From assembly GCF_022045235.1 (NCBI RefSeq), contig NW_027266319.1, forward strand, positions 26,598,001-26,662,000: DNA of 64,000 nt, given 5' to 3'. Positions 6,187 through 37,836 of the stretch are shown one piece after another. The notes under the pieces were generated by a model, which saw only the letters and a program-made list of their open reading frames with translations, was not told the DNA's origin and did no database searches. Both the position numbers and the translations under genes were made by a program. This stretch comes from Haliotis cracherodii. Its lineage: Eukaryota. Within the stretch, counting starts at the first letter, position 1; the number at the start of each line of letters is the position of its first letter.

Positions 6187-7379
6187 AACATACAAGGTTC
6201 GTCTGCAAGACAACGCCTTCATGGTCTTTTGGCTCTCTCCCTCTGCTCTGCGGTTAGTCGAGACACGTTCGTTGTTTTAAACGGTTTCGTGTGATAAGAG
6301 AGTACAATCCTGCTCATGTTTTATACCAGAATTTAAAAAGCGGAACTTTGTGCACATTTTGCAATGTGTAGTGATTAAATTCACTTTTCTCGCAAATCAC
6401 TTGAAGCACGTGCACATGTTCACAGGGAATAGGTAAGTTCCAGCTATGTGTTACCGACTGTTTTCGTGCTGTTTAGCAAATTTGTTGAAAACTGACGACC
6501 ATTGTTTATTTGGTTGCGTTTCTTTTGCCCCTCAGTTTATCAGCAACAAAAAATGTTAAGCTCAGTAAATCATTGCTATATATTTGAAAAGAAATCTGCT
6601 TGTTTATATGTTTAAAAAATATTGTAATGAGATTGTATAACATTTGTCCCAGCTGTTCATGTGCAAAAGTTTCATCTTATGTGTAGGGAATTGGATACCG
6701 AATAAGCCTGTCTTCTACCGTTGTCAGGCTAGAGTGAAGTAAAGGCCCTGTCATACTACAACGTTTCAGAGTAGCTTGCACCTACCGTGCAAAAAAAAGT
6801 TAGTACGCTGTCATACGTCGAGATTTCATCGAAAAAACAGGATTTTGGCGTATCCATAGCGTATAAATAACGACATCCCCGTATATGTAACGCATGTCTA
6901 ACGTATTAGTTGCATATCACTGACTTATACATAAATTATGACAGCGTATAAAAGCGTATTATCAGCGTGTGTCTGGCGTGTTCAACGAGCGCTTCAGACA
7001 ACGTCTATTTGGCAAGCGGGGTGTAGTATAGGTGAGGTGAAATGGGGTTTAACGTCGCGTCCAAGATTATTGTACTTATATAGCGACGTGCATATTGTTG
7101 ATTTATATGGTGATAACAGAAAGAAGCCAACTGTACATGTCGGGGTACGAATATAGTGTTGATAGGATTAATTACAGATGATTATAGCTGCAATGTTCTA
7201 TTGTTTTATGTTTCATTGTAGGCAGATGGGACGATGTATCTTTGATCTCTGTTGATTGAGGGCTTGTGTCGGTGGAATTGAACTGCTTCTGCTAGTTATC
7301 TTAACTGTTACTTACCAACTTTAAAAAATGCCAATCAAACATCGGTTTTCGCAAATCACCTCGCTCATGCACATATTGA

Positions 7380-7755
7380 AATTGTCAAACTCGTTTGAAA
7401 AAAATGTGATCACAGATCATTCTCATCAGATGTGGCACGTATCCCCCAAAAGTAGTTATATGATCGATGTATGGAGCTCGAATCTCACTCTAGATTCGGT
7501 AAAGAACACAGCGCCTCTTGTTTAATAGTTGACTCCCCATTATGTCGAACAATATTCTTGCAGTTCCAGCACTAGGTGTCTACATTTCACAACTTCTCAA
7601 GTAAAATCAAGCATGCTCTTTCAACCATGATTTCAAGGAACGTCATACGACTCTTGTCCAGAAGCTGTTTGATAAAGGCCACAACATCCAAGGCCTCAGT
7701 AAAGTTTCAAAACGTTTTATGGTAGATATGTGGAGAACCTTCCAAATTTGACATC
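7380..7755 (+). mobile_element. Degraded Penelope-like retroelement RT C-terminal fragment (mirror copy at ~35595-35970, - strand)
   Basis: Frameshifted translation VYISQLLK*NQACS...HDFKERHTTLVQKLFDKG...FKTFYGRY resembles the GVYISQLIRYARACS...KLLKQGY motif of Penelope-like elements. Confidence 0.55.
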
Positions 7756-8795
7756 AGTGACAAGAATGATGTCCGATGCAATTCCCTAATTTGACTTGTA
7801 CCAAAAGTTCCCCTGGTTTTTCAGGTGAACAATTGACTTGCCGTTGCATGTGTTTGTGACGGGTGCCACAGGTGGGGCAGGATACGCTCACCTTCTCGCC
7901 ATCACATGGTATCATCACTGTTTGATAGTGATTCATAAACACATGCTAATGGTACAGTCGGAATCGTACAGTCGACTCTGCTTTTGGCAGAGATTTCTTA
8001 TGAATATGGAAAAGGTCACTTTTGTTTTATTGTCTAACGCCGCACTCGGCAACATTCCAGACATATGACGACAGTCTGTTAATAATCCAGTGATTGATGT
8101 TGTGAGGAACGATCCACGCCGCCCTGGGGTCCAAGTCTTACCTGGAATCTTCACGCGGAAAAATATTTTCAGGCCAAACATTGTCACGTAGAACCCAATA
8201 TTAGGTTGTTGTTGTTTAACGCCGCACTCCAATATTCCAACTATACTGAATCGCAAAAGAAACGTCACCCCAAGTAACATTGCATGAAAAGTTGTCATTT
8301 AAATATCTCGGTAATTTTTGTCAAAGTTTAACATTACCTTGTCCGGAAAAATGAAATTTGATGATAAAAAAACAAAGCAGATGACAATAAAACCGATAGC
8401 CCAAACGCATCACGGCAACGGCCATGGTAACCTCCGTGCAAATTGAAATACACATGCGTTCCCCCATTTCTTGCCCTATAAAAATCCACCCAGATCGGAT
8501 AACATTCATTCGTTATTGAATTGCTACTCCATGCCAAGATTGACAAGAAATCAGCGACAACGAAACGAAGTTTTTAAAAGTAATTAATAATGTACAGATG
8601 GTTTCATTAAATTCAACATTGCATAAATATTCAAATCTCTGTCAGTATGATTCAAAATGTTTGTTTATTGTTCAGGGCGCCTTCTACATTTTCAAAGGCG
8701 TGGTTTACTTTCGGGTCAGGGATTTTCTACGTGTTGTGTTTCTCGCGGCCAGACCCCTCGCATCGCCGGCAGCACATGCACAGCAGGATGATGAA

Positions 8796-9338
8796 CATCT
8801 TCCCGAGGCAAGAGAGTTAACTGACTTTAAAAGTCCAGTTTCCACCCTTGCCGAACTAGGCTGGAATTCCTGGGCTCGATCGTAGCGCCACCAGTGGCTA
8901 TTGCGAGTGATGTCCTTTCTATGCCTCTCCGATTGACCAATCAGATTCAACCTCTCGTATCACATGCATTTGCTTCAAACAAAACGGTGGCGCCCAGTCG
9001 AGACGATCTGATTGATAATCAAGATCTATATTGTGATAAAACGAGTCTTACATCGCGAAGTGCATCAAATCACGTGAGCACCTTGACTAAATGCATGAAA
9101 AGATTTAGAAAATATCTGTTGACAACGGGTTAGCGGTGCACATGTTTTGCAAATCCTGCAGTCGACCGAAATCTGCATGACACTTTACGAACCGGATTTC
9201 GATTTCAGTGCGCGATTTTGATTGGACTATGCATAGACTCGTTAGTCCAGCCAAAGTGTAACTCCATAATACCAGCCTGGTTCGGCAAGGGTGGAAACTG
9301 GACCTTAATAGTCAGTTAACTCTTGTCTCGGGAAGATG
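8796..9338. mobile_element. 543-bp MITE with terminal inverted repeats (TIRs) and a 9-bp TSD (Mutator-like by TSD length)
   Basis: Ends CATCTTCCCGAG / CTCGGGAAGATG with ~70-bp imperfect TIRs; TSD gatga(t/g)gaa at 8787-8795 and 9339-9347; empty site in the intact gene near 33570. Confidence 0.9.
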
Positions 9339-9384
9339 GATGAGGAACTGCAGGGCGCACATCCCGATCAGGCAGCCGACCATA

Positions 9385-10290
9385 GTCCAGAACACGTCAT
9401 GCCGTACCACTGAAACACAGAACACGTCATGCCGTACCACTGAAACACAGAACACGTCACACTAGTACACAACTGACACACAGAACACGTCATACTGATT
9501 CACCGCTGAAACACAGAAAACGTCATACTGATACACCACTGAAACACAGAACACGTCACACTGGTGCACTACTGAAACACAGAACACGTCACACTAGTAC
9601 ACAACTGACACACAGAACACGTCATACTGATTCACCGCTGAAACATAGAACACGTCATACTGATACACCACTGAAACACAGAACACGTCATACTGATTCA
9701 CCGCTGAAACATATAACACGTCACACTGATGCGCTACTGCAACACAGAACACGTCATACTCATTCACCGCTGAAACACAGAACACGTCATACTGATACAC
9801 CACTGAAATACAGAACACGTCATACTGATACACCACTAAAACACAGAACACGTCATCCTAATACACCACTGAAACACAGAACACGTCATACTGATACACC
9901 ACTGAAACACAGAACACGCCATACTGATACACCACTGAAACACAGAACACGCCATACTGATACACCACTGACACACAGAACACGCCATACTGATACACCA
10001 CTTAAACACAGGACACGTCATACTGATACACCACTTAAACACAGAACACGTCATACTGATACGCCACTGAAACACAGGACACGTCATACTGATACACCAC
10101 TGAAACACAGAACACGTCATACTGATACACCACTGGAACACAGAACACGTCATACTGATACACCACTGAAACACAGAACACGTCATACTGATACATCACT
10201 GAAACACAGAACACGTCATACTGATACACAACTGAAATACAGAACACGCCATGCTGATGCCCACTTTAAATCATAACACGCCATGCTGGT
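9385..10290 (-). repeat. 33-bp minisatellite (~27 units), pseudogene copy of the intron 2 array
   Basis: Unit ctgaaacacagaacacgtcatactgatacacca is the reverse complement of the 31640-33525 unit. Confidence 0.95.
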
Positions 10291-10732
10291 TCCCCACTGA
10301 ATCTATCCCTGAATAATACGTAAAGGTTTGCTTCGCATACCAGAGCAGTACCGAAGGTCAAATTCGAGTTTAATAACAGCATATTTCAGAATTCGGGACA
10401 ATAATAAAGAATGTTCTCAAAAACTTTAAAAAATGAGTTTGTGCTTAGACACTGTGGAAGTTTGGACTTAAGGCAACATCAGGGCAAGAACTTCTTAGTC
10501 TTATGTTAAAAGTGAGCTGATTCATCTGGTAGGGACGTGATCTGAACTTACTTAGGTTGGATTTTGTCTTGTCTGCTTCATTGTTTTTGTCTGATCCACC
10601 TGTCTTTGGCTCATATATCACTTCCGGACCAAATCCCGAGCATCGAGGCCAGTTCTTTGGCTGAGCAGGGTGTTTGTTCTGAGCCTCGTTGATCATCATC
10701 GCCATCCCGTCAGCGTTGTGCATCTCAATGTG

Positions 10733-11580
10733 AAAACGTTAGCATCTATCAATAAACAGTTAAAGGACAAATAAAGTGCGTTTTACGTTCCCATCTGTAA
10801 CAAGATCTAATTTTCATTTCACTTGTGGTGATATCACATTGTAATATCTAAAAATACCAAGGATTGTGATTAAATGAGACATGGAAAAACTGTAATAAAG
10901 AACTTTGCAAATCAGCCAGCCAGACACGACAGGAGGAATGTCTTTTCAAGTTTTTAGCAATTTGTATGAAACACTGGTTGAAACTGCAATGTTTTCTTGA
11001 GCAGCAATGTGGAATGTATACAAATACAAAGCGATTAATACCCTGCAACACTAGGCATGCCATTTTGTTCCTTGGAGTCAGGAAAATACCTCTCATCTCG
11101 TTGTTAATGGCGGCATAGGGCTCAACTCATCTTTTGTAAATATGCACAGAGGCGTTTTCATTTTTTGTTTGTCTAATTCGAACACCAACAGCATATGATA
11201 GAATATGTTGTAAACAATTTATCTGGTCCCAAAAATATAATAATATCTTGTTTTTTTAAGGTGAAATAACTGGTCAATTTATATGTTGTTAATCATATTA
11301 TACAATCTACTTTTTCAAAAAGAAAGAATACTGACTTAATCCAAGAATGTATTATTAACAAATATGACGATAACTGGAGAAAAGATTTATGGGATGATTC
11401 TAATAATATCAATGGCAACGAGTTAGGGATTTGTCCACATTGTTTTAGTATCTATAATGTTCGCACTGTTGAAGATGAGAGGCACTTTTTAATGTCATGT
11501 CCTTTTTGTTCTGACTTAAAAGATGAACTTATCCACGGAATTATGTATCTAACATTTAACGACTGTTGAAAAAATTATTC
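10733..11580 (+). mobile_element. Degraded LINE ORF2 3' fragment (RTE-X-like)
   Basis: ICPHC...TVEDERHFLMSCPFCSDL C-terminal Cys/His motif; mirror of 24990-25836. Confidence 0.7.
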
Positions 11581-12971
11581 AACGTACATGCGACAATAAA
11601 TCGTCGTTAAAAATATAAGCGTAAGAGTTGTGTTGTTATATTCTTGAAAACACCCACTTTTATGGAACACTGAACCAGGGGCTCGTTACACAAAGTGATC
11701 TTAGCGCTACGAATATCATAACTCCCATATTTAATCATTAAGCGCTAATATAGCATTGGAGGAACTCGCGGAACACTCGCGGAACACTCGTCAATGTGTC
11801 CTCGGCTGCATCAACAATCTCATTAAAAGGTGATATTTATCTTTGATACGATAACTGCCTGCAGGAAGATATTACAAACCTTTTAACCCGACTTCATGTC
11901 GCTTCCACCTTGATTTGTAAATTTCGATTTTAACAAAACTACACCTATCACAAATATTACATCGGTTGTCCTCCCTTTTAGGTTTATGTCATCGCTATAT
12001 AACGTATCCCCCCCAAATATATCGTTGTCTTTCTTATTTTTATTCGGAACTGGTCGTTTATATTCGTTCTTGAGATACAAACAACAGATCTGCTCTGAAT
12101 GCTTCACTCTCGCTCGAACTGATAATTTTGAAGAATCGTCCCTGATTCACTGAAACTTTACCTGTCACACCTACGGTTGGTTTGTTATATTTTCACACTG
12201 AGAGAAAAAGATCTGATTTAAACGAGACTGCCTTCAGTGCAATTGTTGAGAGCGGGTGAACATTTACTCCTTCATTTAATAGCAGTATTCCAAACATAAC
12301 ATGGCGGGAACACTTGAAATGTTCTTCACACAGTGTACCCATGAGTGGAATCAAACCTGGTTACCAAGCTGTCGCACTAACCACTAGGCCAACCTACTGT
12401 CACAAGGATCTCCTAATATCATTGTTAACGTCATAATTCCCGTTTGCGCAATAGAGACTTTCAGTAAGGTTTGCTTCCATTGCTTTATGTGAGGTCAGCT
12501 TATACCCCCGCTCACTTACCCAAGCATCGGCCGCGAGTCAACTACCCGCAGTTTACAACAGTTCTACTGGGTGGAAAACATATTACATGGACTAGTATTG
12601 AGGTTGTACACAGATGGAATAAAACACCGACGCTCCCATGGTTTTACGACATGCGTGATATGTAATATCCACATGGGTTGAATATAAAGTTGTGTCACAG
12701 CGGACCAAACATACTCTGTCGCTCTACTTTAGTCCAATGTACACTACTCCGTGTTTTGAGGCGTGTGATGCGTGTTCTAAATGCTTAAATAAACAGATAC
12801 ACAATCGCCGTGTACGCCTGTTGACATAGCCCCTATTAACTGGGCTGTCAGAATGCAGGGCCCCGACAACGTCATTCACAGCCGAAGTACAACCTTGAAC
12901 TTGACAAACGTTCAAAGTCACTGGCGCATTCTGGGTCACCGCGCGTCACGTTCTCAACGTGTTCTGTAAGC

Positions 12972-13112
12972 CTTGTGGTTAATGTGTTCGCTCGTCACGC
13001 CGAATGACTGGATTCCATTCTCCACATGCGTACACTATGTGAAGCCCATTCAGGTGTCCCCGTCATGATATGGAGTATTGTTAAAAGCCGCATAAAATCA
13101 TACTCACTCACT
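12972..13112 (+). mobile_element. SINE family A, diverged
   Basis: tRNA-like head, same body as 5856-6020, ACTC tail. Confidence 0.8.
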
Positions 13113-13117
13113 TTACA

Positions 13118-13391
13118 TGTTTGTTTATTTGTTGTTTAACGCCGCACTCAGCAATATTCCAGCTATATGACGGCGGTCTGGAAATAGCCGAGTCTGGTCC
13201 AGACAATCTAGAGATTGATATCATGATATCGATCTACGCAATTGGGATACATTGTATGATTGACATGCATCAACCAAATCAGCGAGTCTGACCACCCGAT
13301 CCCGTTAGTCGCCTCGTACGACAAGTATGGTCGTTTTTACGTCAAGCATGGGTTGTTGAAGATCTATTCTACCCCGGATCTTCACGGGTCT
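13118..13391 (-). mobile_element. SINE family B
   Basis: Same body and same 5' start (gacccgtgaagatccgggg) as other B copies. Confidence 0.85.
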
Positions 13392-13934
13392 GGTGTTCAC
13401 GGGTCTGGTGTTCACGGGTCTGGTGTTCACGGGTTCACTTTACAGGTGCCTTATGTTGATGACAGAGGAGTTACATACTAGTGGGGGAGTGGCATCACTG
13501 GCACATTACAAACATATTTCTTCGGCTCAAACACGGCTCTATTTATATGATATTTTAGTGGTGGAATTAGGTACTCGGCGGTTTAGAGCTAATATTTGCA
13601 GATGATGATGTTTTCTCTCATAAATATATAAACTTGGTAGACTTCTGGCTAAAGAACCAGGTTTATTTGATACGTGAGAAGCCATTCCTCGTGTGCCAAC
13701 CGTAACATCGCTTGAATATTTCTAAGAGTTCATACCAAGCTCACTCACATTCCTCTCGAATATGCCAGTATATATTGCAACGTACAAACTAGTCATGTAT
13801 TTACATATTCATGTCCCACGCAACATGCTAATATCAACCTTTCAAAGGCAGTTATCTGGGAAACGTTGTCATAATAGGAAGAAATTCGTGATTAGCCTTG
13901 ACTCCAAACGAGCACTTCTTGATACCTGCTCGTA

Positions 13935-14038
13935 TCAGGTGGCCCAGTAGTCAAAGGTGCCGCAATTCACTTCGCAGAGTTGCGTCCCTTGGGCACGCCA
14001 GAAACCTATGATTGTGATTTCGGAACCCGGTTCGCATC
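13935..14038 (+). mobile_element. tRNA-derived head of SINE family D
   Basis: Matches the reverse complement of 43352-43455 and 53812-53912. Confidence 0.7.
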
Positions 14039-14284
14039 GATAATGTTTCCTGTTAAGGCGACTTTTAGGTACAGACCCTTATGAGGTTGTCAAGCAGCCG
14101 GTAATAGAATCTATACCGGAATTCATCCTTACAGTAAATAAAGAAGTTGTTATCCATAAATTGTCAGCTAAGTATAGGTCCACTCATTTTGGACCAGCAC
14201 TTTTGTCAATCACCTAAACATTACTTGCCCATATTAATGGGCCTGTTATGAGCAAACATAACCCTGATACTAGTACTATTCTCA

Positions 14285-16000
14285 GGTGAAATGTCTGGTG
14301 AACTCACGGGTGAAATGTCTGGTGAAAAGTCAGGTGAGATGTCTGGCGAAATGTCCGGTGAGATACATTAGGTGAAATATCCGGTGAGATGTCTGGTGAG
14401 GTATCCGGTGAGTTTTCTGAGGAGGTATTTGGTGAGATGTCTGGTGAAATGTCTGGTGAGATGTCTGGTGAGATGTCCGGTTAAATGTCTGGTGAGATGT
14501 CCGGTTAAATGTCTGGTGAAATGTCCGATGAAATGTCTGGTGAAATGTCCGGTTAAACGTCTGGTGAGATGTCCGGTTAAATGTCTGGTGAAATGTCCGG
14601 TGAGATGTCCAGTGAAATGTCCGGTGAAATGTCCGGTGAGATGTCTGGTGAAATGTCTGGTGAAATGTCCGGTGAAATGTCCGATGAGATGCCCGGTGAA
14701 ATGTCCGGTGAGATGTCTGGTGAAATGTCTGGTGAGATGTCCGGTGAGATGTCCTGTGAGTTGTCTGGTGAAATGTCTGGTGAAATGTACGGTGAGATGT
14801 CTGGTGAGATGTCCGGTTAAATGTCTGGTGAAATGTCCGATGAAATGTCTGGTGAAATGTCCGGTTAAATGTCCGGTGAGATGTCTGGTGAAATGTCTGG
14901 TGAAATGTCTGGTGAAATGTCTGGTGAAATGTCCGGTGAAATGTCCGGTGAGATGTCTGGTGAAATGTCTGGTGAAATGTCCGGTGAAATATCCGATGAG
15001 ATGCCCGGTGAAATGTCTGGTGAAATGTCCGGTGAGATGTCCGGTGAGATGTCCGGTGAAATGTCCGGTGAAATGTCCGGTGAGATGTCCGGTGAAATGT
15101 CCGGTGAGTTTTCTGGTGAAATGTACGGTGAGATGTCTGGTGAAATGTCCTGTGAGATGTCTGGTGAAATGTCCGCTGAAATGTCCGATGAGATGTCTGG
15201 TGAAATGTCTGGTGAAATGTCCGGTGAAATGTCCGATGAGATGTCCGGTGAGATGTCTGGTGAAATGTCTGGTGAAATGTCTGGTGAAATGTCTGGTGAG
15301 ATGTCTGGTGAGATGTCCGGTTAAATGTCTGGTGAGATGTCCGGTTAAATGTCTGGTGAAATGTCTGGTGAAATGTCCGGTTAAACGTCTGGTGAGATGT
15401 CCGGTTAAATGTCTGGTGAAATGTCCGGTGAGATGTCCAGTGAAATGTCCGGTGAAATGTCCGGTGAGATGTCTGGTGAAATGTCTGGTGAAATGTCTGG
15501 TGAAATGTCCGATGAGATGCCCGGTGAAATGTCCGGTGAGATGTCTGGTGAAATGTCTGGTGAAATGTCCGGTGAAATGTCCGGTGAGATGTCCGGTGAA
15601 ATGTCCGGTGAGATGTCTGGTGAAATGTACGGTGAGATGTCTGGTGAAATGTCCTGTGAGATGTCTGGTGAAATGTCCGCTGAAATGTCCGATGAGATGT
15701 TTGGTGAAATGTCTGGTGAAATGTCTGGTGAAATGTCCTATGAGATGTCCGTTGAGATGTCTGGTGAAATGTCTGGTGAAATGTCTGGTGAGATGTTTGA
15801 TGAGATGTCCGGTGAGATGTCCGGTGAAATGTTTGGTGAGATGTTTGATGAGATGTCCGCTGAGATGTCTGGTGAGATGTCCGGTGAGTTGTCTGGTGAG
15901 ATGTCCTGTGAGTTGTCTGGTGAAATGTCCAATGAGATGTCTGGTGAAATGTCCGGAGAGATGTCTGGTGAAATGTCTGGTGAAATGTCCGGTGAAATAT
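14285..16000. repeat. 12-bp minisatellite (GGTGARATGTCY)n, ~140 units, with internal block duplication
   Basis: Directly visible; the same variant series recurs at 14581 and 15409 (828 bp = 69 units). Confidence 0.97.
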
Positions 16001-16224
16001 GAGGTGACCTTATAGGGCGAAAATAGCGTTACGACTGTCGCAAGTCAATATGCAAGTGATTTTGTTATTATGACATTGATAGCGTCCAGAATGTGTTGAA
16101 AGGGTTCCCTTTCAGAAGCGATATATACTAAAACACTGTTTGTGGTCGTAGCACAAAGCTTGCGAAAGATACATTCATAGCTCTGGCGTTGCATTTAGAC
16201 ACAATAGTCGCTTTAAGTTGCGTA

Positions 16225-16490: not shown

Positions 16491-16671
16491 GCAACAATGC
16501 TTATGTCGCAACAAGGAACAGTAGGCGTTCGAAGATTGTGTTACAATAACGGTAGCGATCTAAAACAGTGCTTAAGTGCAAATCGATAGTTATTAAACAA
16601 AGGCCATCGAGGAAAGAGATAGTCTATCAAGGCACTCTCTTTTAAATAACGATACTGCCTTCAGCGCAATT

Positions 16672-16682
16672 ATGTGTGTGTC

Positions 16683-27290: not shown

Positions 27291-27324
27291 TACCCGTTCA
27301 AGGTGTTTCTTGCCACAGGTCTGC

Positions 27325-27944: not shown

Positions 27945-28560
27945 TTGACGTTTCACCTGACATTTCACTTCACGTTTCACCTTACATTTAACCTACCATT
28001 TCACCAGACATTTCACCCGAAATTTCGCAAGACTTTTCATCTGACATTTTACCAGACATTTTACCTGACATTTCACCTGATATTTCACCTGAAATTTCAC
28101 CCGAAATTTCGCAAGATTTTTCACCTGACTTTTCATATGACATTTCACCTGATATTTCACCTGACATTTTACATGAATTTTCTCCAGATATTTCACTTGA
28201 CGTTTAACCTTAAATTTCACCTGAAAATTCACCAGATATTTCACTTAACGATTCACCTAACAATTCACCAGATATTTCACCCGACATTTCAGCAGACATT
28301 TTACATGACATTTCCCAATATATTTCACCAGATTTTTTACCTGACATTTCACCAGACCTTCACCTAACATTTCACCAGATATTTCACCTAACAACTTCAC
28401 CAGACATTTCACTTGACATTTTACTTGAAATTTCACAAGTTATTTCAACTAACATTTCAGCAGACATTTCCCCAGAAGTTCTCCTGACATTTCACCTGAA
28501 ATTTCTCCAGACATTTCACCAGATATTTCACCTAACATTCCATCTGACATTTCACCATTA
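27945..28560. repeat. 12-bp minisatellite (AGACATTTCACC)n, degenerate, in intron 1
   Basis: Reverse complement of the 14285-16000 unit. Confidence 0.92.
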
Positions 28561-29378
28561 CTTGACATAGTCTGACATGTTATATTTCGTTTTAATTTGT
28601 GAAAAAGGATTTGAAAATCTTGGATCAGTTTTCATCCTAATTAAACCCCAGTACAGTATCAATCTTCAAATATTATCGACTTTAATTATGCCTGCGTCCA
28701 CAACACGGTGAATGGTCAAGAATCGTCCTGATCCTAATTCGAAACAGCTTCGACCAATACTATACGTTTCATTCTGATATGGATGGGAAGCCTAATGTGA
28801 TGCATGTTTTCCAAGACGTTTACCATGTTCATACCCACAAGCACAGGCATGGTGCTGACAAGCCAGTAACATGGAGAACCTCAGAATGAATCCTTAAACT
28901 CAGCTAATTACGGCACCTTAGGCGACTTGCCCTCTAACACTTCAAGCCAGACACTTGAATCCTACTATTAACAAGAACGTTTACAACTGAATCCACGTGA
29001 CGAACTTAGAGATTATCTCTCGCTAGCTGACATATTTTGCTATGAATATGCCGGATTTCTTTTGAACAGATACATATCGAATTAAGGGATAAATAGAAAA
29101 ATATACTCAAATATGTGATTTACTGGTATCTGTCTCCTGTGAAGACTGTCCTTCGTCCCCGCCAACGCTCGGGATTTTTCCGCAATTCCCTGTATGGTGC
29201 TGGCTACTCTTATATTGCCGTTTGTTATTGTTTACACCAGTCCATGGCAACTAGTGGATAACTGTATGAGAAAGACATGCATTGTCAAGTGTCTTTTTGT
29301 TTAACGTGAAATGTGTTTTATACTCGGTGTGTCTATTTTTAAGAGGTCTTGACTGGTATGGTCCCCGTTGTTTTGCAG

Positions 29379-31345
29379 GATGAGGTGTGTCCGAGCAGTC
29401 ACGTGTCTTCTGCTGTCAATCATTTCAGCGAGGGGCGTGGTTTCAGAATGCCTGATGACAGATGACGAGTGCGTATTTCACCTCACCATTAAACACCGCC
29501 TGACCATGATGAAAGACAACATGGCTGTTTTCCCTTCTGGTCGGAAATTGTATAAGTATGACGTCACTAACACGTCAGAAGCAACCCCTATGACACCGGA
29601 TGGAATAATCCAAGCCGACGGCTATGAGCCACAGCGCTTGGTCACAGTTGCTAACGGCACCATGCCTGGACCCGCCATTGTCGTCTATGAAGATCAAACG
29701 GTCATTGTCCATGTTAAAAATGAGCTTTATAACGAGGGCGTATCAATGCATTGGCACGGTCTTCATCAAAAAGGCACCCCGTTTATGGACGGAGTATCGT
29801 TCATTACCCAGTGTCCAATTCTTCCGGGTCAGTCGTTCACCTACAAGTTCAAGGCTAAACCCAAGGGCACCTTCTGGTATCATTCTCACAATGCCAATCA
29901 GAGGACCATGGGCCTTCAAGGTCCGCTGATTATCAAAGAGAAGAAAGCATCGACGATGGATGAAATGATAATGGTGCTACAAGACTGGAACCACGACGAC
30001 TCAACGACCGTGCACTTAAAGATGGATTTCGGTGGATTCGAGGAACGAAAACCTCTTAATACAACAGATGCTCTCGATGGCTCCCATTTCAGCCGGTATT
30101 TCATGACAAGTGGTCTTATCAACGGCAAGGGCCGTCTCTATGATAAGTTCGGGCGTCATAATGACGCACCGCTATCTATTTTCACAGTGAGACCAAATCA
30201 ACTGTACAGGTTCCGGGTCATCGCCGCTGGCCACCTCTACCCATTCCGGGTGTCCGTGCACGGTCACGAACTGACCATTGTGGCGTCCGACGGGTATGAC
30301 CTGCGTCCAGAAGTCGCAGAGTCCTTCATCATCAACCCTGGTGAGAGAATCGACTTCATCCTTAACACCACGAACGTAGTGGACAACTACTGGATTCGGG
30401 CACAGACTCTCGAGGAAGGTGTGGACCACAAAGCTGAAGCCATCCTCAGATACGAAGGAGCGCCTGATGCAGAACCAACTTCATTCAGGAGAACATGCTC
30501 GGAAGCTGATCCGTGTCGCGTCATCAACAGCCCTTTCACTTACTACCCAATAGTTAACACTGAAACAGTCAGGTTCGACCAACTCAAATCTTTGTCTAAT
30601 GATGACCCTGCTCCTCCGGTGACCTCTGGGAAGTTCAAAGAACACTTCCTCAACTTTGCTTTCCCCGGCTATACACATTACCCAGGTCAAGTCAATGGAC
30701 ATAAATTCAAGATGCCTCATGTCGCGGGTCTGACCCAAATGAATGAGATTGATACATCATGCGACAAAGTAGACTGCGGGTTTAACAAGACCTGTCACTG
30801 TACATACACCCTCAACCTTACGTACGGAGACACTGTTCAGATGGTCTTTCTCAACATGGGCAACGGGAAGGGTTGGTCTCATCCGATTCATCTCCACGGC
30901 CATTCCTTCTACGTGCTTAAGATGGGCTATGCCATACAAAATAGCTCCACTTATCAAATCGAAGGAAGTAACATGGACATAAGCTGTAACGGGGATCCTT
31001 TTTGTAATGCTCCTACATTTGAAAACTCATCGTGGACGGGGGATAACATACCTGGCCTGGAGCTGAAGAACCCACCGCGGAAGGATACCATTATAGTGCC
31101 AACTGGTGGTTATGTGGTTGTGAGAATCCGCGCTGACAACCCTGGGCTGTGGTTCATGCATTGCCACATTGAGATGCACAACGCTGACGGGATGGCGATG
31201 ATGATCAACGAGGCTCAGGACAAACATCCTGCTCCGCCAAAGAACTGGCCCCGATGCTCGGGATTTGGTCCGGAAGTGATATATGAGCCAAAGACAGATG
31301 GATCAGACAAAAACAATGAAGCAGACAAGACAAAATCCAACCTAA
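29379..31345 (+). CDS. Laccase-like multicopper oxidase, main exon (signal peptide plus three cupredoxin domains)
   Basis: Uninterrupted ORF with all four copper motifs: HWHG, WYHSH, HPIHLHGH, WFMHCHIEMHNADGM (Met as T1 axial ligand); signal peptide MRCVRAVTCLLLSIISARGVVS; donor CTAA|GTAAGT at 31346. Confidence 0.96.
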
Positions 31346-31639
31346 GTAAGTTCAGATCACGTCCCTACCAGATGAATCAGCTCACTTTTAACATAAGACT
31401 AAGAAGTTCTTGCCCTGATGTTGCCTTAAGTCCAAACTTCCACAGTGTCTAAGCACAAACTCATTTTTTAAAGTTTTTGAGAATATTGTTTATTATTGTC
31501 CCGAATTCTGAAATATGCTGTTATTAAACTAGAATTTGACCTTCGGTACTGCTCTGGTATGCGAAGCAAACCTTTACGTATTATTCAGGGATAGATTCAG
31601 TGGGGAACCAGCATGGCGTGTTATGATTTAAATTGAGCA

Positions 31640-33525
31640 TCAGCATATCGTGTTCTGTATTTCAGTGGTGTATCAGTATGACGTGTTCTGTGTTTCAGTG
31701 GTGTATCCGCGTGGCGTTTTCTGTGTTCCAGTGGTGTATCAGTATAACGTGTTCTGTGTTTCAGTGATGCAGTATGGCGTGTTCTGTATTTCAGTGATAC
31801 AGTATGACAAGTTCTGTGTTTCAGTGGTACAGTATGACGTGTTCTGTGTTTCAGTGGTGTATCAGTATGACGTATTCTGTGTTTCAGTGGTGTATCAGTA
31901 TGACGTGTTCTGTGTTGCAGTCGTGTAACAGCGTGGCGTTTTCGATGTTTCAGTGGTGTATCAGTATGACGTGTTCTGTGTTTCAGTGGTGTATCAGCGT
32001 GGCGTTTTCGATGTTTCAGTGGTGTATCAGTATGACGTGTTCTATGTTTCAGTGGTGTATCAGTATGACGTGTTCTGTGTTTCAGTGGTGTATCAGTATG
32101 ACGTATTCTGTGTTTCAGTGGTGTATCAGTATGACGTTTTCTGTGTTTCAGTGGTGTATCAGTATGACGTGTTCTGTGTTTCAGTGGTGTATCAGCGTGG
32201 CGTTTTCGATGTTTCAGTAGTGTATCAGTATGACGTGTTCTATGTTTCAGTGGTGTATCAGTATGACGTGTTCTGTGTTTCAGTGGTGTATCAGTATGAC
32301 GTATTCTGTGTTTCAGTGGTGTATCAGTATGACGTGTTCTGTGTTGCAGTCGTGTAACAGCGTGGCGTTTTCTGTGTTTCAGTGGTGTATCAGTATGACG
32401 TATTCTGTGTTTCAGTGGTGTATCAGTATGACGTGTTCTGTGTTGCAGTCGTGTAACAGCGTGGCGTTTTCGATGTTTCAGTGGTGTATCAGTATGACGT
32501 GTTCTGTGTTTCAGTGGTGTATCAGCGTGGCGTTTTCGATGTTTCAGTGATGTATCAGTATGACGTGTTCTATGTTTCAGTGGTGTATCAGTATGACGTG
32601 TTCTGTGTTTCAGTGGTGTATCAGTATGACGTATTCTGTGTTTCAGTGGTGTATCAGTATGACGTGTTCTGTGTTTCAGTGGTGTATCAGTATGACGTGT
32701 TCTGTGTTTCAGTGGTGTATCAGCGTGGCGTTTTCGATGTTTCAGTGGTGTATCAGTATGACGTGTTCTATGTTTCAGTGGTGTATCAGTATGACGTGTT
32801 CTGTGTTTCAGTGGTGTATCAGTATGACGTATTCTGTGTTTCAGTGGTGTATCAGTATGACGTGTTCTGTGTTTCAGTGGTGTATCAGCGAGGCGTTTTC
32901 TGTGTTTCAGTGGTGTATCAGTATGACGTGTTCTGTGTTGCAGTCGTGTAACAGTATGACGTGTTCTGTGTTTCAGTGGTGTATCAGTATGACGTGTTCT
33001 GTGTTTCAGTGGTGTATCAGTATGACGTGTTCTGTGTTTCTGTGGTGTATCAGTATGACGTGTTCTGTGTTTCAGTGGTGTATCAGTATGACGTGTTCTG
33101 TGTTGCAGTCGTGTAACAGTATGACGTGTTCTGTGTTTCAGTGGTGTATCAGTATGACGTGTTCTGTGTTTCAGTCGTGTAACAGTATGACGTGTTTGAG
33201 TTTCAGTGGTGTATCAGTCAGACGTGTTCTGTGTTTCAGTGATGTATCAGTATGACGTATTCTATGTTTCAGTGGTGTATCAGTATGACGTGTTCTGTGT
33301 TTCAGTGGTGTATCAGTATGACGTGTTCTGTGTTTCAGTGGTGTATCAGTATGACGTGTTCTGTGTTTCAGCGGTGAATCAGTATGACGTGTTCTGTGTT
33401 TCAGTGGTGTATCAGTATGACGTGTTCTGTGTTTCAGTGGTGTATCAGTATGACGTGTTCTGTGTTTCTGTGGTGTATCAACATGTCATATTCTATGTTT
33501 CAGTGGTACAGCATGACGTGTTCTG
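31640..33525 (+). repeat. 33-bp minisatellite (~56 units) filling intron 2; each unit is a splice acceptor plus the exon 3 start
   Basis: Unit tggtgtatcagtatgacgtgttctgtgtttcag compared with the real junction ttctatgtttcag|tggtacagcatgacgtgttctgg; 528-bp (16-unit) block repeated at 31921 and 32449. Confidence 0.96.
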
Positions 33526-33709
33526 GACTGTGGTTGGCTGCCTGATCGGGGTGTGCGCCCTGCAGTTCCTCATCCTGCTGTGCATGTGCTGCCGGCGATG
33601 CGAGGGGTCGGGCCGGGAGAAATACAGCATGGACAACACCCCTGACCCCAAAGTAAACCACGCCTTTGATAATATAGAGGGCGACCTGAACAGTAAACAA
33701 AAATTTTGA
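33504..33709 (+). CDS. Multicopper oxidase terminal exon: transmembrane helix and cytoplasmic tail
   Basis: Phase-1 junction A|TG gives MVQHDVFWTVVGCLIGVCALQFLILLCMCCRRCEG...NHAFDN...QKF*; hydrophobic span followed by Cys cluster and RR; total spliced CDS 2193 nt = 730 aa. Confidence 0.85.
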
Positions 33710-34084
33710 TTCATATTGACAGAGATTTGAATATTTATGCAATGTTGAATTTAATGAAACCATCTGTACATTATTAATTAATTTTAAAAACTTTTTAAGA
33801 AATCATTGACGAATCAACGACATTATCATATTGGTCAGTCGGGAGTTAATCAAGGACCAGTACTGTGCATGGAGGCTAAATGTCACTGGTGTGGCGGCAT
33901 TGGCTGTGTGAAAACCTGCAATTAGTTTGTTGATTGGGATCAGTTGATCAAAGATTTGATGTAAGTGGCCATTTCCTTCCGTATTATTGCAATTATTTTT
34001 AATATTCGAATGTAATATTAATTGTTGTTGACTCTAGCTACATGCAGTAAAACTGCTGCTCTAAGGAGGGTCCACATAAACTTA

Positions 34085-34172
34085 AGGGGCATTCACACAG
34101 TACAACTAGTTGTATACAATTTGTTGCATGCAACAAATTGTATACAACTAGTTGTACCGTGTGAATGCCCCT
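34085..34172. mobile_element. 88-bp fully palindromic MITE (PIF/Harbinger-like)
   Basis: AGGGGCATTCACAC...GTGTGAATGCCCCT, one mismatch, no loop, TTA on both sides. Confidence 0.8.
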
Positions 34173-34906
34173 TTAGATGGAAAACTCCAACATTCTGCCA
34201 CTTGAATCTCTATCACACGATGTGCGTACTGTAAAATTGGTCAAGCCGTGTTCACGTGTCTGGAATAGTGGAGTGAGTCATTGCAGTAGAACAGAAGACG
34301 AGCGTGTGGATCAATCAATCCATCGTCAGTACTTCACGGTATACACTTGATCATGAGCCAATACACATACGGCCTGGTTCTTGAGAGAGGGATACCTGAG
34401 TGTGGCCAATCGGCGCTCAGATTACACCGGCATTATTATATTGTGCCGCAGTCATCTACTCCACACATTGTTTCAATATCAGGCTATGGTAGGGCTCGCT
34501 CACAGTTCGTGCACGGAGTATCGCTCAATTGACTTTTGTGAGTTATACAAGACCACGTTTCACGAGCTGACTCAATACAGACACGCGCATTGCAGTCGTG
34601 TGTATTCACGGCTGATGGAGTTCTGACTTCCTTGGTCCTTGTGCACTTTGTATATTTACCTGTATAAAAATCACTTATTTTTTTATAAAACCATTTTACA
34701 GAACACATGATTCCTGTTTGTGATTTACCCAAGGAAGACATTAACTGTTGTTATGGCAACGCCCTTATATTATCTCGACTATGTGCTTCAGTGGTTAGCC
34801 CGATGCTCCACTGTAACTTGTTTGTACGAAGGGAACGGATGGCAGAGTTGTGTCCCTTGTATGCGAATAGTTGCGCCCTTTAGCTTGATGGGTCACTAAA
34901 CATTGG

Positions 34907-35160
34907 GACCAGTAAAGATCCGGGTTAGAATTGGCCTTCAGCAACTCATGCTTGCCGTAAAAAGCGACTATGCTTGTCGTAAGAGGCGACTAAGGGGGGT
35001 CGGGGGCTCAGGCTCGCTGACTTCGCTGATGCATGTCATCGTATCCCAATGCGTGGATCGATGCTCATGGTGTCAGTCACTGGATTGTCGGGTCCAGAGT
35101 CCAGACCGCCGCCGTCATATAGCTGGAATATTGCTGAGTGTGACGTAAACAACAACAACC
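34907..35160 (+). mobile_element. SINE family B
   Basis: Head gaccagtaaagatccggg..., duplicated atgcttg..gcgact module, AAC tail. Confidence 0.8.
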
Positions 35161-36334
35161 TAACATTGGGTTCTACGTGACAATGTTTGGCCTGAAAGTA
35201 TTTTCCGCGTGATGATTCAAGGTAAGTCTTGGACCCCAGGACGGCGTGGATCGTTCCTCACAACATCAATCACTGGATTATTAACAGACTGTCGTCATAT
35301 ATCAGGAATGTTGCCGAGTGCGGCGTTAGACAATTAAACAAAAGTGACATTTTCCATATTCAAAAGAAATCTCTGCCAAAAGCAGAGTCGACTGTACAAT
35401 TTCGACTATATCATGAGCATGTGTTTATGAATCACTATCAAACAGTGATGATACCAGGAGCGGGCGAGAAGGTGAGTGTATCCGGCACCCGTCACAAACA
35501 CATACAACGGCAAGTCAATTGTTTACCTGAAAAACCACGGGAACATTTGGTACAAGTCAAATTAGGGAATTGCATCGGACATCATTCTTGTCACTGATGT
35601 CAAATTTGGAAGGTTCTCGACATATCTACCATAAAACGTTTTGAAACTTAACTGAGGCCTTGGATGTTGTAACCTTTATCAAACAGCTTTTGGACAAGAG
35701 TCGTATGACGTTCCTTGAAATCTTGGTTGAAAGAGCATGCTCGATTTTACTTGAAAAGTTGTGAAATGTAGACACCAAGTGCTGGAACTGCAAGAATGTT
35801 GTTCGACATAATGGGGAGTCAACTATTAAACAAGAGGCGCTGTGTTCTTTATCGAATCTAGAGTGAGATTCGAGCTCCATACATCGATCCTATAACTACT
35901 TTTAGGGGATACGTGCAACATTTGATGCGACCGATCTGTGATCACAGTTTTTTCAAACGAGTTTGACAATTTCAATATGTCCATGAGAGAGGTGGTTTGC
36001 GAAAACCGCTGTTTGATTGGCATTTTTTAAAGTTGGTAAGTAACAGTTAAGATAACTAGCAGAAGCAGTTCAATTCCACCGGCACAAGTCCTCAATCAAC
36101 AAGGATTCATCGTCCCATCTGCCTACAATGAAACATAAAACAATAGAACATTGCAGCTATAATCATCTCTAATTAATCCCATCAACACTATATTCGTACC
36201 CCGACATGTACAGTTGGCTTCTTTCTGTTGTCACCATATAAATCAACAATATCCTTTGACGTTGTTAATCCCTTTCATGCATACCCTTATGCTGTTTTTG
36301 TTCATCCTTATTAGATGTATATAAGTCTATACTG

Positions 36335-36670
36335 TGGTCCGCCTACGTGGTCTAGTGGTAGAGCGTCCGCCCGGAGAGCGGTCCGGCGTCCGGGGTCGAT
36401 CCCGGGCTGCGTCATACCAAAAGACGTAAAAAGATGATACTTGTTGTTACCCTGTCTGGCGCTCGGCATTAAGGGGCTAAAAAGGACTGGTTGTATCGGA
36501 GTCAGTATACTATGTCTGAGTGGGGTATTTATGTCAAACTGCGGCATGGTATCTCAGTGTGCTAGCACATCGACATCTGTCCGGACAAGCAGCCATACAC
36601 ACACATACTTATGCACACGTGCATACACGTCGATATATAAGTGCAATAATCTTGGACGCGACGTTAAACC
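36335..36670 (+). mobile_element. tRNA-derived SINE family C with a Meta-like central domain
   Basis: A and B boxes followed by gtcataccaaaagacg...gatacttg...cctgtctggcgctcggca; only its 3' end survives in the left arm (~7030-7090). Confidence 0.7.
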
Positions 36671-36759
36671 CCATTTCACCTCACCTATACTACACCCCGC
36701 TTGACAAATAGACGTTGTCTGAAGCGCTCGTAAAACATCACGAACTCTCTCTCGCTTAT

Positions 36760-37319
36760 GACCCTGTCACACTACAACGTAAAGCAGTAATGTATGGCGA
36801 CGTATGAAAAGTTTTGACAAGACGCCGGCAACGCTGAAACACGCTATGGATAAGTTAGGTGTAAGTTGCATACGTTAAAGGCACGCTGGTATACGTTGTA
36901 GTACGCCGAGGCTTAAAAACATTTTTGTGCATGCACAAAATATTCGGTGTATGGGAACGAATAGAGGTATGAATTATACGCTTGGCACGCTCGACATTTA
37001 CATGTTACCCATACGGTCCGTATTAGGCACCTTTCCCATACGCTGAGCGCGCTAGTCATACGTTACTCATACGCTGGGCATACGCTGGCCATACGTTGAA
37101 CACGCCAGACACACGCGGGCAATACACTTTTATACGCTTATCATAATTTATGTATAAGTCAACTAATACGTTAGACATGCGTTGCATATATGGTGGACTC
37201 GTTATGTATACGCTATGGATACGCCAAAATCATACGAAAGCTCGACGTATTACTGCATACTAACTGTCTTTTGCACGGTAGGTGCACGCTACTCTGAAAC
37301 GTTGTATTATGACAGGGCC
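36760..37319. mobile_element. MITE with TIRs ccctgtca(c/t)actacaacgt
   Basis: Inverted ends at 36762 and 37317; partly deleted mirror copy at 6744-6985. Confidence 0.65.
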
Positions 37320-37836
37320 TTTACTTCACTCTAGCCTGACAACGGTATAAGAATAAGTTTATTCGGTATCCAATTCCATACACACAAGATGAAACTTTTG
37401 CACATGAACAGGTGGGACAAATGTTATGCTATCTCAATACAATATTTTAAAACATATAAACAAGCAAATTTCTTTTGAAATATACAGCAGTACTTTACTG
37501 AGCTAAATATTTTGTGTTGTTGATAAGCTGAGGGGCAAAAGAAACGCAACCAAATAAATAATGGTAATCGGTTTTCAACAAATTTGCCAAATAGCACGAA
37601 AACAGTTGGTAACACATAGCTAGAATGCAGCTTTCCTATTCCCCGTATACATGTGCACGTGCTTCACGTGATTTGCGTGAAAAGTGAATTTAATCACTAA
37701 AAATTGCAAAATGTGCACAGAGTCACCCGTTTGAAATTCTGGTATAAAACATCAGCAGGATTGTACTCTCACATCACACGAAACCGTTTAAAACAACGAA
37801 GTGCCTCGACTAACCGCAGAGCAGAGGGAGAGAGCC

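What the first reader, a model, noticed from the sequence alone, without database searches (positions are those of the whole stretch)
6231..37836. A ~31.6-kb fossil palindrome centred near 20,750 contains the gene and its inverted pseudogene
Seen: at least seven separate reverse-complement matches are strictly nested and in order around one centre, from 20471/21028 out to 6231/37836. Arm differences are explained by later events, for example two Tc1 remnants only on the left, a SINE with TSD only on the right (empty site at ~12735) and a MITE only on the left. Inference: a fold-back duplication made a head-to-head gene pair, and one member then decayed.
Basis: seen in the sequence. Interest (0 to 1): 0.78.

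Follow-up and report, generated by a model that had tools for sequence, protein, structure and literature searches.

The report
Decayed palindrome around a laccase gene
A 31.6-kb stretch of what appears to be an abalone chromosome is a real but old mirror-image duplication in which one arm keeps an intact membrane-anchored laccase gene and the other keeps only the gene's tail end; this is an ordinary kind of gene-family rearrangement.

Summary
A self-comparison gives 13 strictly nested reverse-complement blocks, 6230-20471 against 37837-21028, around a 556-bp single-copy spacer (20472-21027). Substitution identity is 91.2% over 4890 non-tandem columns. The innermost, outermost and several middle blocks occur nowhere else in the 1.18-Gb assembly.

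The right arm carries an intact multicopper-oxidase (laccase) ORF (29368-31452). It is followed by an intron holding a 33-bp minisatellite and by a transmembrane exon. The left arm keeps only the last 96 codons of that ORF. A clean 5324-bp deletion with 3 bp of microhomology removed the rest. Its transmembrane exon is split by a MITE and carries a stop.

Arm-specific MITE, SINE and Tc1 insertions check out, two of them with target-site duplications. Short-read contigs from two studies of the species and from two related species labels cover the centre.

A single-step inverted duplication is the most economical origin, but this is inferred, not shown. One 431-bp tract is 98% identical, which suggests arm-to-arm gene conversion.

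The locus is a laccase cluster with further paralogs. It is a new member of a known kind, of modest interest.

The parts
6230..20471 (.). Left arm of the inverted duplication (14,242 bp)
   Evidence: 13 nested inverted blocks; sharp outer end at 6230 and sharp inner end at 20471.
20472..21027 (.). Single-copy spacer (556 bp) between the arms
   Evidence: the arms match up to ...GTGAAC and then part; no other copy in the assembly; contigs of 4 runs cover it.
21028..37837 (.). Right arm of the inverted duplication (16,810 bp)
20077..20471 (.). Innermost left block, 92.9% identical to 21421-21028 and unique to this locus
21028..21421 (.). Innermost right block, partner of 20077-20471
   Evidence: a 403-nt contig of organism B covers 21028-21427.
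29368..31452 (+). Intact 694-codon multicopper-oxidase (laccase) ORF of the right arm. The coding exon probably ends at a GTAAGT donor near 31344.
   Evidence: ORF; the motifs HWHG, HSH, HPIHLHGH and HCHIEMH can be read in it. Cu-oxidase_3, Cu-oxidase and Cu-oxidase_2 at E 9e-43 to 3e-28; 96% identical to Haliotis rufescens laccase-5-like; donor.
31649..33525 (+). 33-bp minisatellite (57 copies) inside the intron of the right-arm gene
   Evidence: it lies between the donor and the transmembrane exon of the annotated H. rufescens homologue.
33500..33709 (+). Last exon of the right-arm gene: transmembrane segment and cytoplasmic tail, stop at 33709 (start approximate)
   Evidence: compared with the C-terminus of P0001.
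25841..31164 (+). 5324 bp of the right arm (upstream region plus the first 599 codons) that is missing from the left arm
   Evidence: the left blocks abut at 10730-10732; junction with the 3-bp microhomology CAC.
10445..10732 (-). Left-arm gene relic: the last 96 codons of the laccase ORF, open, 98.3% identical to the right copy
9388..10301 (-). Left-arm copy of the intron minisatellite (28 copies)
8568..8796 (-). Left-arm remnant of the transmembrane exon and its downstream flank. It is cut at 8796 by the MITE and has an in-frame stop.
8796..9338 (.). MITE found only in the left arm, with a 9-bp target-site duplication and ~73-bp terminal inverted repeats
   Evidence: 95-96% identical copies, 23008 first-look candidates, 40 scored; the right arm has the empty site.
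17901..20075 (-). Two Tc1/mariner-like remnants found only in the left arm
   Evidence: DDE_3 in ORFs 18045-18635 and 19118-19696; 94-95% identical copies genome-wide.
23549..23706 (.). SINE found only in the right arm, with an 11-bp target-site duplication
   Evidence: empty site in the left arm at about 12730-12740.
22577..22834 (.). High-copy element found only in the right arm
   Evidence: 3623 first-look candidates, 84-89% identity.
21415..21853 (.). 96-bp tandem repeat found only in the right arm
14282..16489 (+). 12-bp minisatellite (144 copies) plus 42-bp repeats in the left arm. They are not at the position of the right-arm copy (27938-28556). They are collinear with the stretch upstream of the next paralog (63781-60886).
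10302..10732 (.). 431-bp tract with only 8 arm-to-arm differences: candidate gene-conversion tract
   Evidence: K2P 0.019 against 0.05-0.17 in the other blocks. Fisher p = 1e-9.

Best explanation
This is an old inverted segmental duplication, a palindrome with a short unique spacer, inside a cluster of laccase genes in what appears to be an abalone genome.

A segment of roughly 15-17 kb was copied in reverse orientation 556 bp from the original. It held one membrane-anchored laccase gene, its upstream region and the relics of an older unit. That gave two head-to-head genes.

The most economical origin is a single replication or repair event, such as fold-back priming or two template switches. 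This step is inferred.

The arms then diverged to about 9% and picked up their own events. In the left arm one 5.3-kb deletion with 3-bp microhomology removed the promoter side and 599 of 694 codons. A MITE split the last exon, and Tc1 elements inserted. In the right arm a SINE and other elements inserted, and about 3 kb of inner sequence was lost.

The right-arm gene stayed intact. A 431-bp tract at the 3' end of the gene was probably homogenised later by arm-to-arm gene conversion.

Shown: the structure, the uniqueness of the blocks, the lesions and the insertions. Inferred: the mechanism, the order of events and the conversion.
For: Structure:
- There are 13 nested blocks with sharp inner and outer ends. 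The chain scores 6133, against 86 for the reversal control.
- The central pair and spacer are unique in the 1.18-Gb assembly. The outer blocks and block 10733-11563 hit only the other arm.
- An old repeat at 35351-35815 is shared by both arms at 93-95%, but is only 80-84% like its other copies. It was therefore duplicated with the arm.

Gene:
- The right-arm ORF has three cupredoxin domains and is 96% identical to an annotated Haliotis rufescens laccase. That protein's C-terminus matches the separate transmembrane exon.
- The left arm holds codons 599-694 only, then the intron minisatellite and a broken last exon.
- The deletion junction shows CAC microhomology.

Later events: target-site duplications and empty sites were found for the MITE and the SINE. 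The Tc1 remnants are 94-95% like many genomic copies.

Kinship: in every shared segment the left copy is nearest to the right copy. In the last 288 nt, L-R is 98.3% and L-T is 89.2%. In the transmembrane region the figures are 91% against 87%.

Not an artefact:
- The arms differ by 9% and by many indels.
- A 712-nt contig of run X1 spans 20394-21105, across both spacer junctions, with 5 differences.
- Contigs of X2 (same species label, another study) and of X10 (organism B) cover 20442-21057. One of X15 (organism C) covers 20375-21017.

Conversion: there are 8 differences in 431 nt against 420 in 4459 nt, p = 1e-9. 251 nt of this tract are intronic and differ at only 3 sites.
Against: - No long read or long contig spans an arm. 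All four runs laid were short contigs, the longest on the centre being 712 nt. X1 may be the very sample the assembly came from.
- The contigs of X2 and X10 reach only 30 letters into each arm, one short of the tool's 31-letter rule for bridging.
- A classical fold-back after a chromosome break gives a terminal duplication with a deletion (passages of PMC3907307). This one is interstitial, at 26.6 Mb of a 70-Mb contig, with a sharp outer end on both arms, so a second junction is needed.
- Inverted microhomology at the spacer ends cannot be judged after about 7% divergence.
- The 12-bp and 42-bp repeat block of the left arm is out of place relative to the right arm. My account of it, as ancestral and lost from the right arm, is a reconstruction.
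- The ~165-bp internal repeat gives only weak support for positional orthology. Between-arm pairs are 0.86 against 0.80-0.81 within arms, but one cross pair is 0.87.
- Blocks 17712-17870 and 13118-13392 belong to repeat families.
Confidence: 0.75

Rival explanations
1. There were two steps, not one. A tandem (direct) duplication of the laccase unit, like the one that made the neighbouring direct copy, was followed by an inversion of one copy. The inversion could have come from recombination between inverted transposon copies.
For: The cluster does hold direct duplicates (right-arm copy and the copy at 64778-66841) and another inverted copy at 79514-81496, so both kinds of rearrangement have happened here. 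The region is full of MITE, SINE and Tc1 copies in both orientations.
Against: To leave arms that are symmetrical down to a 556-bp spacer with base-sharp inner ends, the inversion breakpoints would have to fall almost exactly at the unit borders. No transposon copies sit at the inner or outer arm ends. The Tc1 next to the left inner block is a young insertion, 94-95% like its relatives, against 91% between the arms.
Confidence: 0.12
2. The structure is composite. Only the outer 7 kb per arm (6230-13330 against 37837-23025) is one duplication. The 395-bp central inverted pair and the small inner blocks are separate events or repeat copies that happen to be collinear.
For: The inner blocks are short (56-180 nt). 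Two of them belong to low- or high-copy families. Between 13330 and 20077 only 4 of the 13 blocks (443 aligned nt) link the arms.
Against: The central pair is unique in the genome, and its divergence (K2P 0.075) lies within the range of the outer blocks (0.05-0.17). All inner blocks keep order and orientation. The arm-length differences in the inner part are accounted for by the Tc1 remnants, the tandem arrays and a high-copy element.
Confidence: 0.08
3. It is an assembly artefact, for example two diverged haplotypes of one locus joined head to head, or a chimeric fold-back read.
For: Run X2, under the same species label, differs from the assembly by 15 substitutions and 7 gap letters in 609 nt of the spacer. 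Haplotypes in this species are therefore quite diverged. No long-read evidence could be obtained.
Against: The arms differ by 9%, a 5.3-kb deletion and several transposons. That is far from the near-identity a fold-back read artefact gives. There are no N gaps. Contigs with arm sequence on both sides of the spacer occur in X1 (78 nt each side). With 30 nt each side they occur in X2 and in another species label, X10.
Confidence: 0.04

Closest known systems
Gene-bearing palindromes of mammalian sex chromosomes (for example the human Y palindromes)
   Same: Two inverted arms carry genes around a short unique spacer, and there is evidence of arm-to-arm gene conversion: here one 431-bp tract at 98% against a 91% background. 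That conversion maintains such palindromes is stated in the abstract of PMC6790999, which I saw only in the listing. The rest is recalled.
   Different: Those arms are kept nearly identical over their whole length and both gene copies work (recalled). Here the arms are 91% identical and riddled with arm-specific insertions and deletions, and one gene copy is reduced to a fragment. This is a palindrome that is no longer maintained.
Inverted duplications with a normal-copy spacer formed by fold-back (Hermetz et al. 2014, PMC3907307; passages read)
   Same: An inverted copy is separated from the original by a short non-duplicated spacer. The paper reports spacers of 766-70,466 bp, median 3,428 bp; here the spacer is 556 bp. 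The boundaries are sharp.
   Different: The human cases are megabase-sized, terminal and joined to deletions or translocations after a dicentric stage. This one is about 15 kb and interstitial, and it has a second sharp junction at the outer end. The short inverted microhomology that defines the fold-back junction cannot be assessed here.
Unprocessed (duplicated) pseudogenes in tandem gene-family clusters
   Same: The left copy keeps intron sequence (the minisatellite) and flanks, so it arose by DNA duplication and not by retroposition. It carries disabling lesions.
   Different: It is in inverted orientation and was truncated by one large deletion rather than by scattered point lesions. Its remaining 96 codons are still open.
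Molluscan laccase / multicopper-oxidase gene family
   Same: The right-arm ORF has the three cupredoxin domains. It is 96% identical to an annotated Haliotis rufescens laccase and 50-60% identical to laccases of many molluscs.
   Different: Nothing unusual was seen in the protein itself. No enzyme activity or expression was tested.

Membership tests
Genomic palindrome / inverted segmental duplication with spacer | Two arms in reverse-complement orientation that are collinear along their length | tested here: met
   13 nested blocks. Chain score 6133 against 86 for the reversal control.
Genomic palindrome / inverted segmental duplication with spacer | The arm sequence is locus-specific, not copies of a dispersed repeat | tested here: met
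   The central pair plus spacer has 1 first-look candidate, itself. The outer blocks and 10733-11563 hit only the other arm among the 40 candidates scored per search. Exceptions: 13118-13392 and 17712-17870.
Genomic palindrome / inverted segmental duplication with spacer | A short non-duplicated spacer with sharp arm boundaries | tested here: met
   556 bp, 20472-21027. The arms are identical for the last 32 nt and then part. The spacer is unique.
Fold-back-type inverted duplication (as in PMC3907307) | [quoted passage not shown] | tested here: inconclusive
   The ends of the spacer show no clear inverted match. A possible 3-nt ATC lies beyond a 1-nt indel. After about 7% divergence the original junction cannot be read.
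Fold-back-type inverted duplication (as in PMC3907307) | Terminal position with an adjacent deletion, translocation or ring after a dicentric stage | tested here: not met
   The locus is interstitial, at 26.6 Mb of a 70.4-Mb contig, and both arms have a sharp outer end.
Maintained (sex-chromosome-type) palindrome | Near-identity of the arms along their length through ongoing gene conversion | tested here: not met
   91.2% identity over 4890 columns. Only 10302-10732 reaches 98.1%.
Fold-back or MITE-like transposable element (for the central pair) | Many dispersed copies of the inverted-repeat unit in the genome | tested here: not met
   No other copy in the 1.18-Gb assembly.
Multicopper oxidase (laccase), right-arm gene | Three cupredoxin domains in the order Cu-oxidase_3, Cu-oxidase, Cu-oxidase_2 | tested here: met
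   Pfam E-values 9e-43, 3.2e-28 and 3.2e-37, all far above the curated cut-offs.
Multicopper oxidase (laccase), right-arm gene | The four histidine-rich copper-binding motifs (HxH, HxH, HxxHxH, HCHxxxHxxxxM; motif list recalled) | tested here: met
   HWHG, HSH, HPIHLHGH and HCHIEMHNADGM can be read in the translation.
Multicopper oxidase (laccase), right-arm gene | Oxidase activity and expression | not testable with these tools
Unprocessed pseudogene, left-arm copy | Homology that includes intron and flanks of the parent gene, plus disabling lesions | tested here: met
   The intron minisatellite and flanks are kept. 599 of 694 codons are deleted, a MITE sits in the last exon, and there is an in-frame stop.

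The most novel reading that the evidence does not exclude
Gene-bearing inverted duplications may be a recurrent way in which this abalone genome expands and then prunes gene families. Their arms may go on exchanging sequence long after one copy is dead. Here a truncated pseudogene arm and a working laccase gene still share a recently homogenised 3' exon and intron tract, so the dead arm could act as a donor of variation for the live gene, including its intronic minisatellite. Other first-stage notes list several more gene-bearing palindromes in the same genome (unchecked).
Probability: 0.25. Interest if true: 0.45.

Novelty: new member of a known kind. Interest (0 to 1): 0.3.

Why it matters
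It documents, base by base, one step in the turnover of a mollusc laccase cluster. An inverted duplication was followed by the loss of one copy through a single microhomology-mediated deletion. Dated transposon insertions and a likely conversion tract serve as internal markers.

For annotation, the left arm should be marked as a pseudogene fragment, and the right-arm gene as a two-part coding gene with a minisatellite intron.

For genome biology it is a useful but unsurprising example. Palindromes with spacers, arm-to-arm conversion and duplicated pseudogenes are all well known. My two paper searches turned up no description of such a structure in abalone or other molluscs. The searches were 'laccase, abalone, Haliotis' (35 papers hold all three terms, 15 listed) and 'inverted duplication, palindrome, mollusc' (241 papers hold at least two terms, 15 listed). 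I read titles and abstract starts only.

Tried and rejected
- Synteny with related genomes. I asked look-up of encoding contigs for the loci of the Haliotis rufescens and H. rubra homologues (P0001, P0002). Instead I used the one sequencing-run run and the one read-laying run, which gave short contigs of two other species labels over the centre.
- Long reads across the centre. None were on offer. All runs laid were Logan contigs of at most a few hundred letters on this stretch, so continuity over whole arms remains untested.
- Transposon presence or absence in other species. The Tc1 stretch is too repetitive for contigs to tell (depth up to 10^5 and above).
- A coincidence I considered and dropped. 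I thought the end of the near-identical stretch between the right-arm gene and the next direct copy might coincide with the left-arm deletion junction (CDS position 1798). The list of differing sites shows identity running on to position 1945, and the drop after 2006 is intronic.
- MAFFT alignments of the transmembrane-exon flank and of the upstream 'C' region (segments 2 and 3). They included non-homologous ends and their percentages are not used. For those regions I rely on the BLAST blocks.
- Rows dropped from the identity figure. It leaves out the minisatellite part of block 9406-10732 and the 56-nt block 13919-13974. It also trims the SINE-like tail of block 12730-13330.
- The internal ~165-bp repeat as a marker of positional orthology. 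The signal was only weak.
- The search of earlier findings with four words found nothing. With 'palindrome' alone it listed unchecked notes elsewhere in the genome.
- Supplements of PMC3907307 (its junction sequences) were not opened. They might refine what counts as fold-back microhomology.
- Spliced model. Each was read and compared on its own.

Full report
**Observation.** BLASTN of the 64-kb window against its own reverse complement gives many inverted matches. Chaining them for strictly nested order yields 13 blocks, from 6230/37837 in to 20471/21028. They hold 6281 aligned nucleotides at a mean BLAST identity of 87%.

- The arms are 14,242 bp (6230-20471) and 16,810 bp (21028-37837). The spacer between them is 556 bp.
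- Both the inner and the outer ends are sharp. At the centre the two arms are identical for their last 32 nt and then part. At the outer ends homology starts abruptly at 6230 and 37837.
- Control: the window against its plain reversal gives a best chain of one block, score 86. The observed chain scores 6133 in 13 blocks outside tandem arrays.
- Removing all pairs inside the feature leaves a best chain of 7 blocks, score 1913, and part of that is real paralogy with the next gene copy.
- There is no N in the window or in 70 kb of flanks.

**Uniqueness of the blocks.** The window is G000:C56:26598001-26662000 in a 1.18-Gb assembly of 80 contigs.

- The central pair plus spacer (20085-21410) has a single first-look candidate in the whole assembly, itself. 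Its only matches are arm to arm at 93%.
- The outer left arm 6230-8245 and block 10733-11563 hit only the right arm among the 40 candidates scored in each search. Those searches score only the best 40 of thousands of candidates, so weak extra copies cannot be excluded.
- Not everything is unique. 13118-13392 is a high-copy SINE-like element. 17712-17870 has up to three other copies. A ~165-bp unit occurs twice in each arm and twice more nearby.
- An old repeat at 35351-35815 lies inside a shared block. The arms agree there at 93-95%, but its other genomic copies are only 80-84% alike. It was therefore duplicated with the arm and did not insert twice.

**The gene.** The right arm holds a 694-codon open frame at 29368-31452 on the plus strand.

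- It has the three multicopper-oxidase domains, at Pfam E-values from 9e-43 to 3e-28. The four histidine motifs can be read in the translation.
- Its best database relatives are a Haliotis rufescens 'laccase-5-like' protein (96% identity, 730 aa), a H. rubra laccase (81%) and many molluscan laccases at 50-60%. I therefore take the genome for an abalone. The species is not determined.
- The C-terminus of the H. rufescens protein does not follow the ORF to its stop. It continues into a transmembrane segment and tail that the window encodes separately, ending at 33709.
- The gene thus has a GTAAGT donor near 31344, an intron that holds the 33-bp minisatellite (31649-33525, 57 copies) and a last exon from about 33500.
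- I read the two exons separately and did not join them.

**The left-arm copy.** It lies on the minus strand, so the pair is head to head.

- It keeps only codons 599-694 of the ORF (10445-10732, still open), the minisatellite (9388-10301, 28 copies) and the last exon.
- The left blocks ending at 10732 and starting at 10730 abut, while their right-arm partners are 5324 bp apart (25841-31164). The junction shows a 3-bp microhomology, CAC.
- The sequence on both sides of the gap is present in the left arm, and three other paralogs have the full gene. This is therefore a deletion in the left arm.
- The last exon is split by a 543-bp MITE and has an in-frame stop.

**Arm-specific events.**

- The MITE (8796-9338) has a 9-bp target-site duplication, and the right arm shows the empty site. 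Its relatives are 95-96% identical and very numerous.
- The right-arm SINE (23549-23706) has an 11-bp duplication and an empty site in the left arm.
- The left-only stretch 17901-20075 is made of two Tc1-like remnants. Two ORFs there carry DDE_3, and many genomic copies are 94-95% identical. There is no clean empty site here, because the right arm has a 96-bp tandem array in the corresponding gap.
- Further right-only pieces are a high-copy element at 22577-22834, a SINE-like element at 34907-35165, and most of an element at 36339-36687. The last ~65 bp of that element are present in the left arm too, so there the left arm may have lost sequence.

**What does not fit simple insertion.**

- A 12-bp minisatellite with adjacent 42-bp repeats lies at 14282-16489 in the left arm, on the centre side of the shared upstream blocks. 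The right-arm 12-bp array (27938-28556) lies on the gene side.
- The left block is collinear with, and more like, the stretch upstream of the next paralog (63781-60886).
- Left 11782-14013 matches that paralog's upstream region (57997-53835) where the right arm has little or nothing.
- My reconstruction is that the ancestral arm had both arrays, the inner one being the relic of an older unit, and that the right arm later lost about 3 kb. This is inference.

**The cluster.** A six-frame search of the assembly finds several more copies.

- An intact direct copy lies just beyond the window end (window coordinates 64778-66841, 96% amino-acid identity).
- An intact inverted copy lies at 79514-81496 (75%).
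- A more distant copy lies just upstream of the window (45%, one piece with stops).
- Three dispersed intact genes on the same contig are 44-46% identical.
- In every segment the left relic shares with others, it is nearest to the right-arm copy. In the last 288 nt the figures are 98.3% to the right copy and 89.2% to the direct copy. In the transmembrane region they are 91% against 87%. The palindrome is therefore the youngest duplication of this set.

**Divergence and conversion.**

- Re-aligning 12 non-tandem blocks gives 91.2% substitution identity over 4890 columns, with K2P between 0.05 and 0.17 per block. The rows dropped are listed under Tried and rejected.
- The exception is 10302-10732, with 8 differences in 431 nt and K2P 0.019. 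The contrast is significant (Fisher p = 1e-9).
- 251 nt of the tract are intronic and differ at only 3 sites, so selection on the protein does not explain it.
- Five of the eight differences are changes private to the left copy, all inside the exon part. This fits a dead copy.
- Arm-to-arm gene conversion after the deletion is the simplest reading. It agrees with another first-stage note on this window (s1-841774).

**Reads.** One runs search and one lay call were available. All runs laid were short contigs.

- In X1 (same species label, possibly the source sample) a 712-nt contig covers 20394-21105 with 5 differences. That is 78 nt of each arm and the whole spacer.
- In X2 (same label, another study) a 609-nt contig covers 20442-21057 with 15 differences and 7 gap letters.
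- In X10 (organism B) a 611-nt contig covers the same span with 29 differences and 21 gap letters. A 403-nt contig covers the right inner block.
- In X15 (organism C) a contig covers 20375-21017 with 38 differences and 22 gap letters.
I take that ending for what a 31-letter word graph does at an inverted repeat (my inference).
- The centre therefore exists outside this assembly, and probably in two related species. That agrees with arm divergence at the centre (7.5%) being larger than the between-species differences (about 5-6%).
- Whole-arm continuity is not tested.

**Mechanism.**

- A short unique spacer between inverted copies is the hallmark reported for inverted duplications formed by fold-back. 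The paper gives spacers of 766-70,466 bp and short inverted microhomology at the junction (PMC3907307, passages read).
- Those cases are terminal. Here the structure is interstitial with a second sharp junction, so two template switches at a replication fork, or a fold-back followed by a second repair, fit better.
- I cannot tell these apart, nor say which arm is the original.
- A tandem duplication followed by an inversion is possible but needs coincident breakpoints.

**Comparison and verdict.**

- It works like the known gene-bearing palindromes but fails the test of maintained near-identity. It is a palindrome in decay.
- The central pair is not a fold-back transposon.
- The protein is an ordinary molluscan laccase.
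- Other first-stage notes report more gene-bearing palindromes in this genome. I did not check them.
- Two paper searches found no description of such a structure in abalone or other molluscs: 15 papers listed in each, titles and abstract starts only.
- I rate it a new member of a known kind, with modest interest.

Noticed in passing
window 29368-31452 and L004 (window coordinates 64778-66841): The right-arm laccase and the next direct copy are 96.7% identical over 2085 nt, with no difference at all between CDS positions 1486 and 1945. Their flanks are only 72-87% alike. Gene conversion between the direct paralogs is likely.
   Followed up: partly
L004-L005 (window coordinates 64778-66841 plus strand, 79514-81496 minus strand): The direct copy and a 75%-identical copy form a convergent, tail-to-tail pair. 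Each has its own 33-bp minisatellite (66920-69021; 78158-78903).
   Followed up: no
window 8796-9338: A 543-bp MITE with ~73-bp terminal inverted repeats and a 9-bp target-site duplication. It has at least 23008 first-look candidates in the genome, and the 40 scored are 94-96% identical. This is a young and very abundant family.
   Followed up: partly
window 14282-16007, 27938-28556, 63414-63781: A 12-bp minisatellite (unit about GGTGAAATGTCN; 144, 52 and 31 copies) lies 0.8-1 kb upstream of both intact laccase ORFs, and once more in the left arm.
   Followed up: partly
window 4651-5555: A 129-bp tandem repeat, 7 copies at 98% identity, just outside the left arm.
   Followed up: no
window 34081-34176: A 96-bp stretch that matches its own reverse complement at 96%. 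It is a small hairpin-like element in right-arm-only sequence.
   Followed up: no
window 20442-21057: A run under the same species label (X2) differs from the assembly by 15 substitutions and 7 gap letters in 609 nt. This is about 2.5% polymorphism in unique non-coding DNA.
   Followed up: no
L003 (window coordinates about -6025 to -446): Another multicopper-oxidase copy lies just upstream of the window, 44-45% identical. It is in two pieces, one of which has three stops. It may be a gene with an intron or a second pseudogene.
   Followed up: no
window 27122-27803 and 50821-51538: An 82% direct match lies far upstream of both intact copies but at very different distances from their ORFs (1.6 kb against 13 kb). 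This bears on another first-stage note about a long first intron.
   Followed up: no
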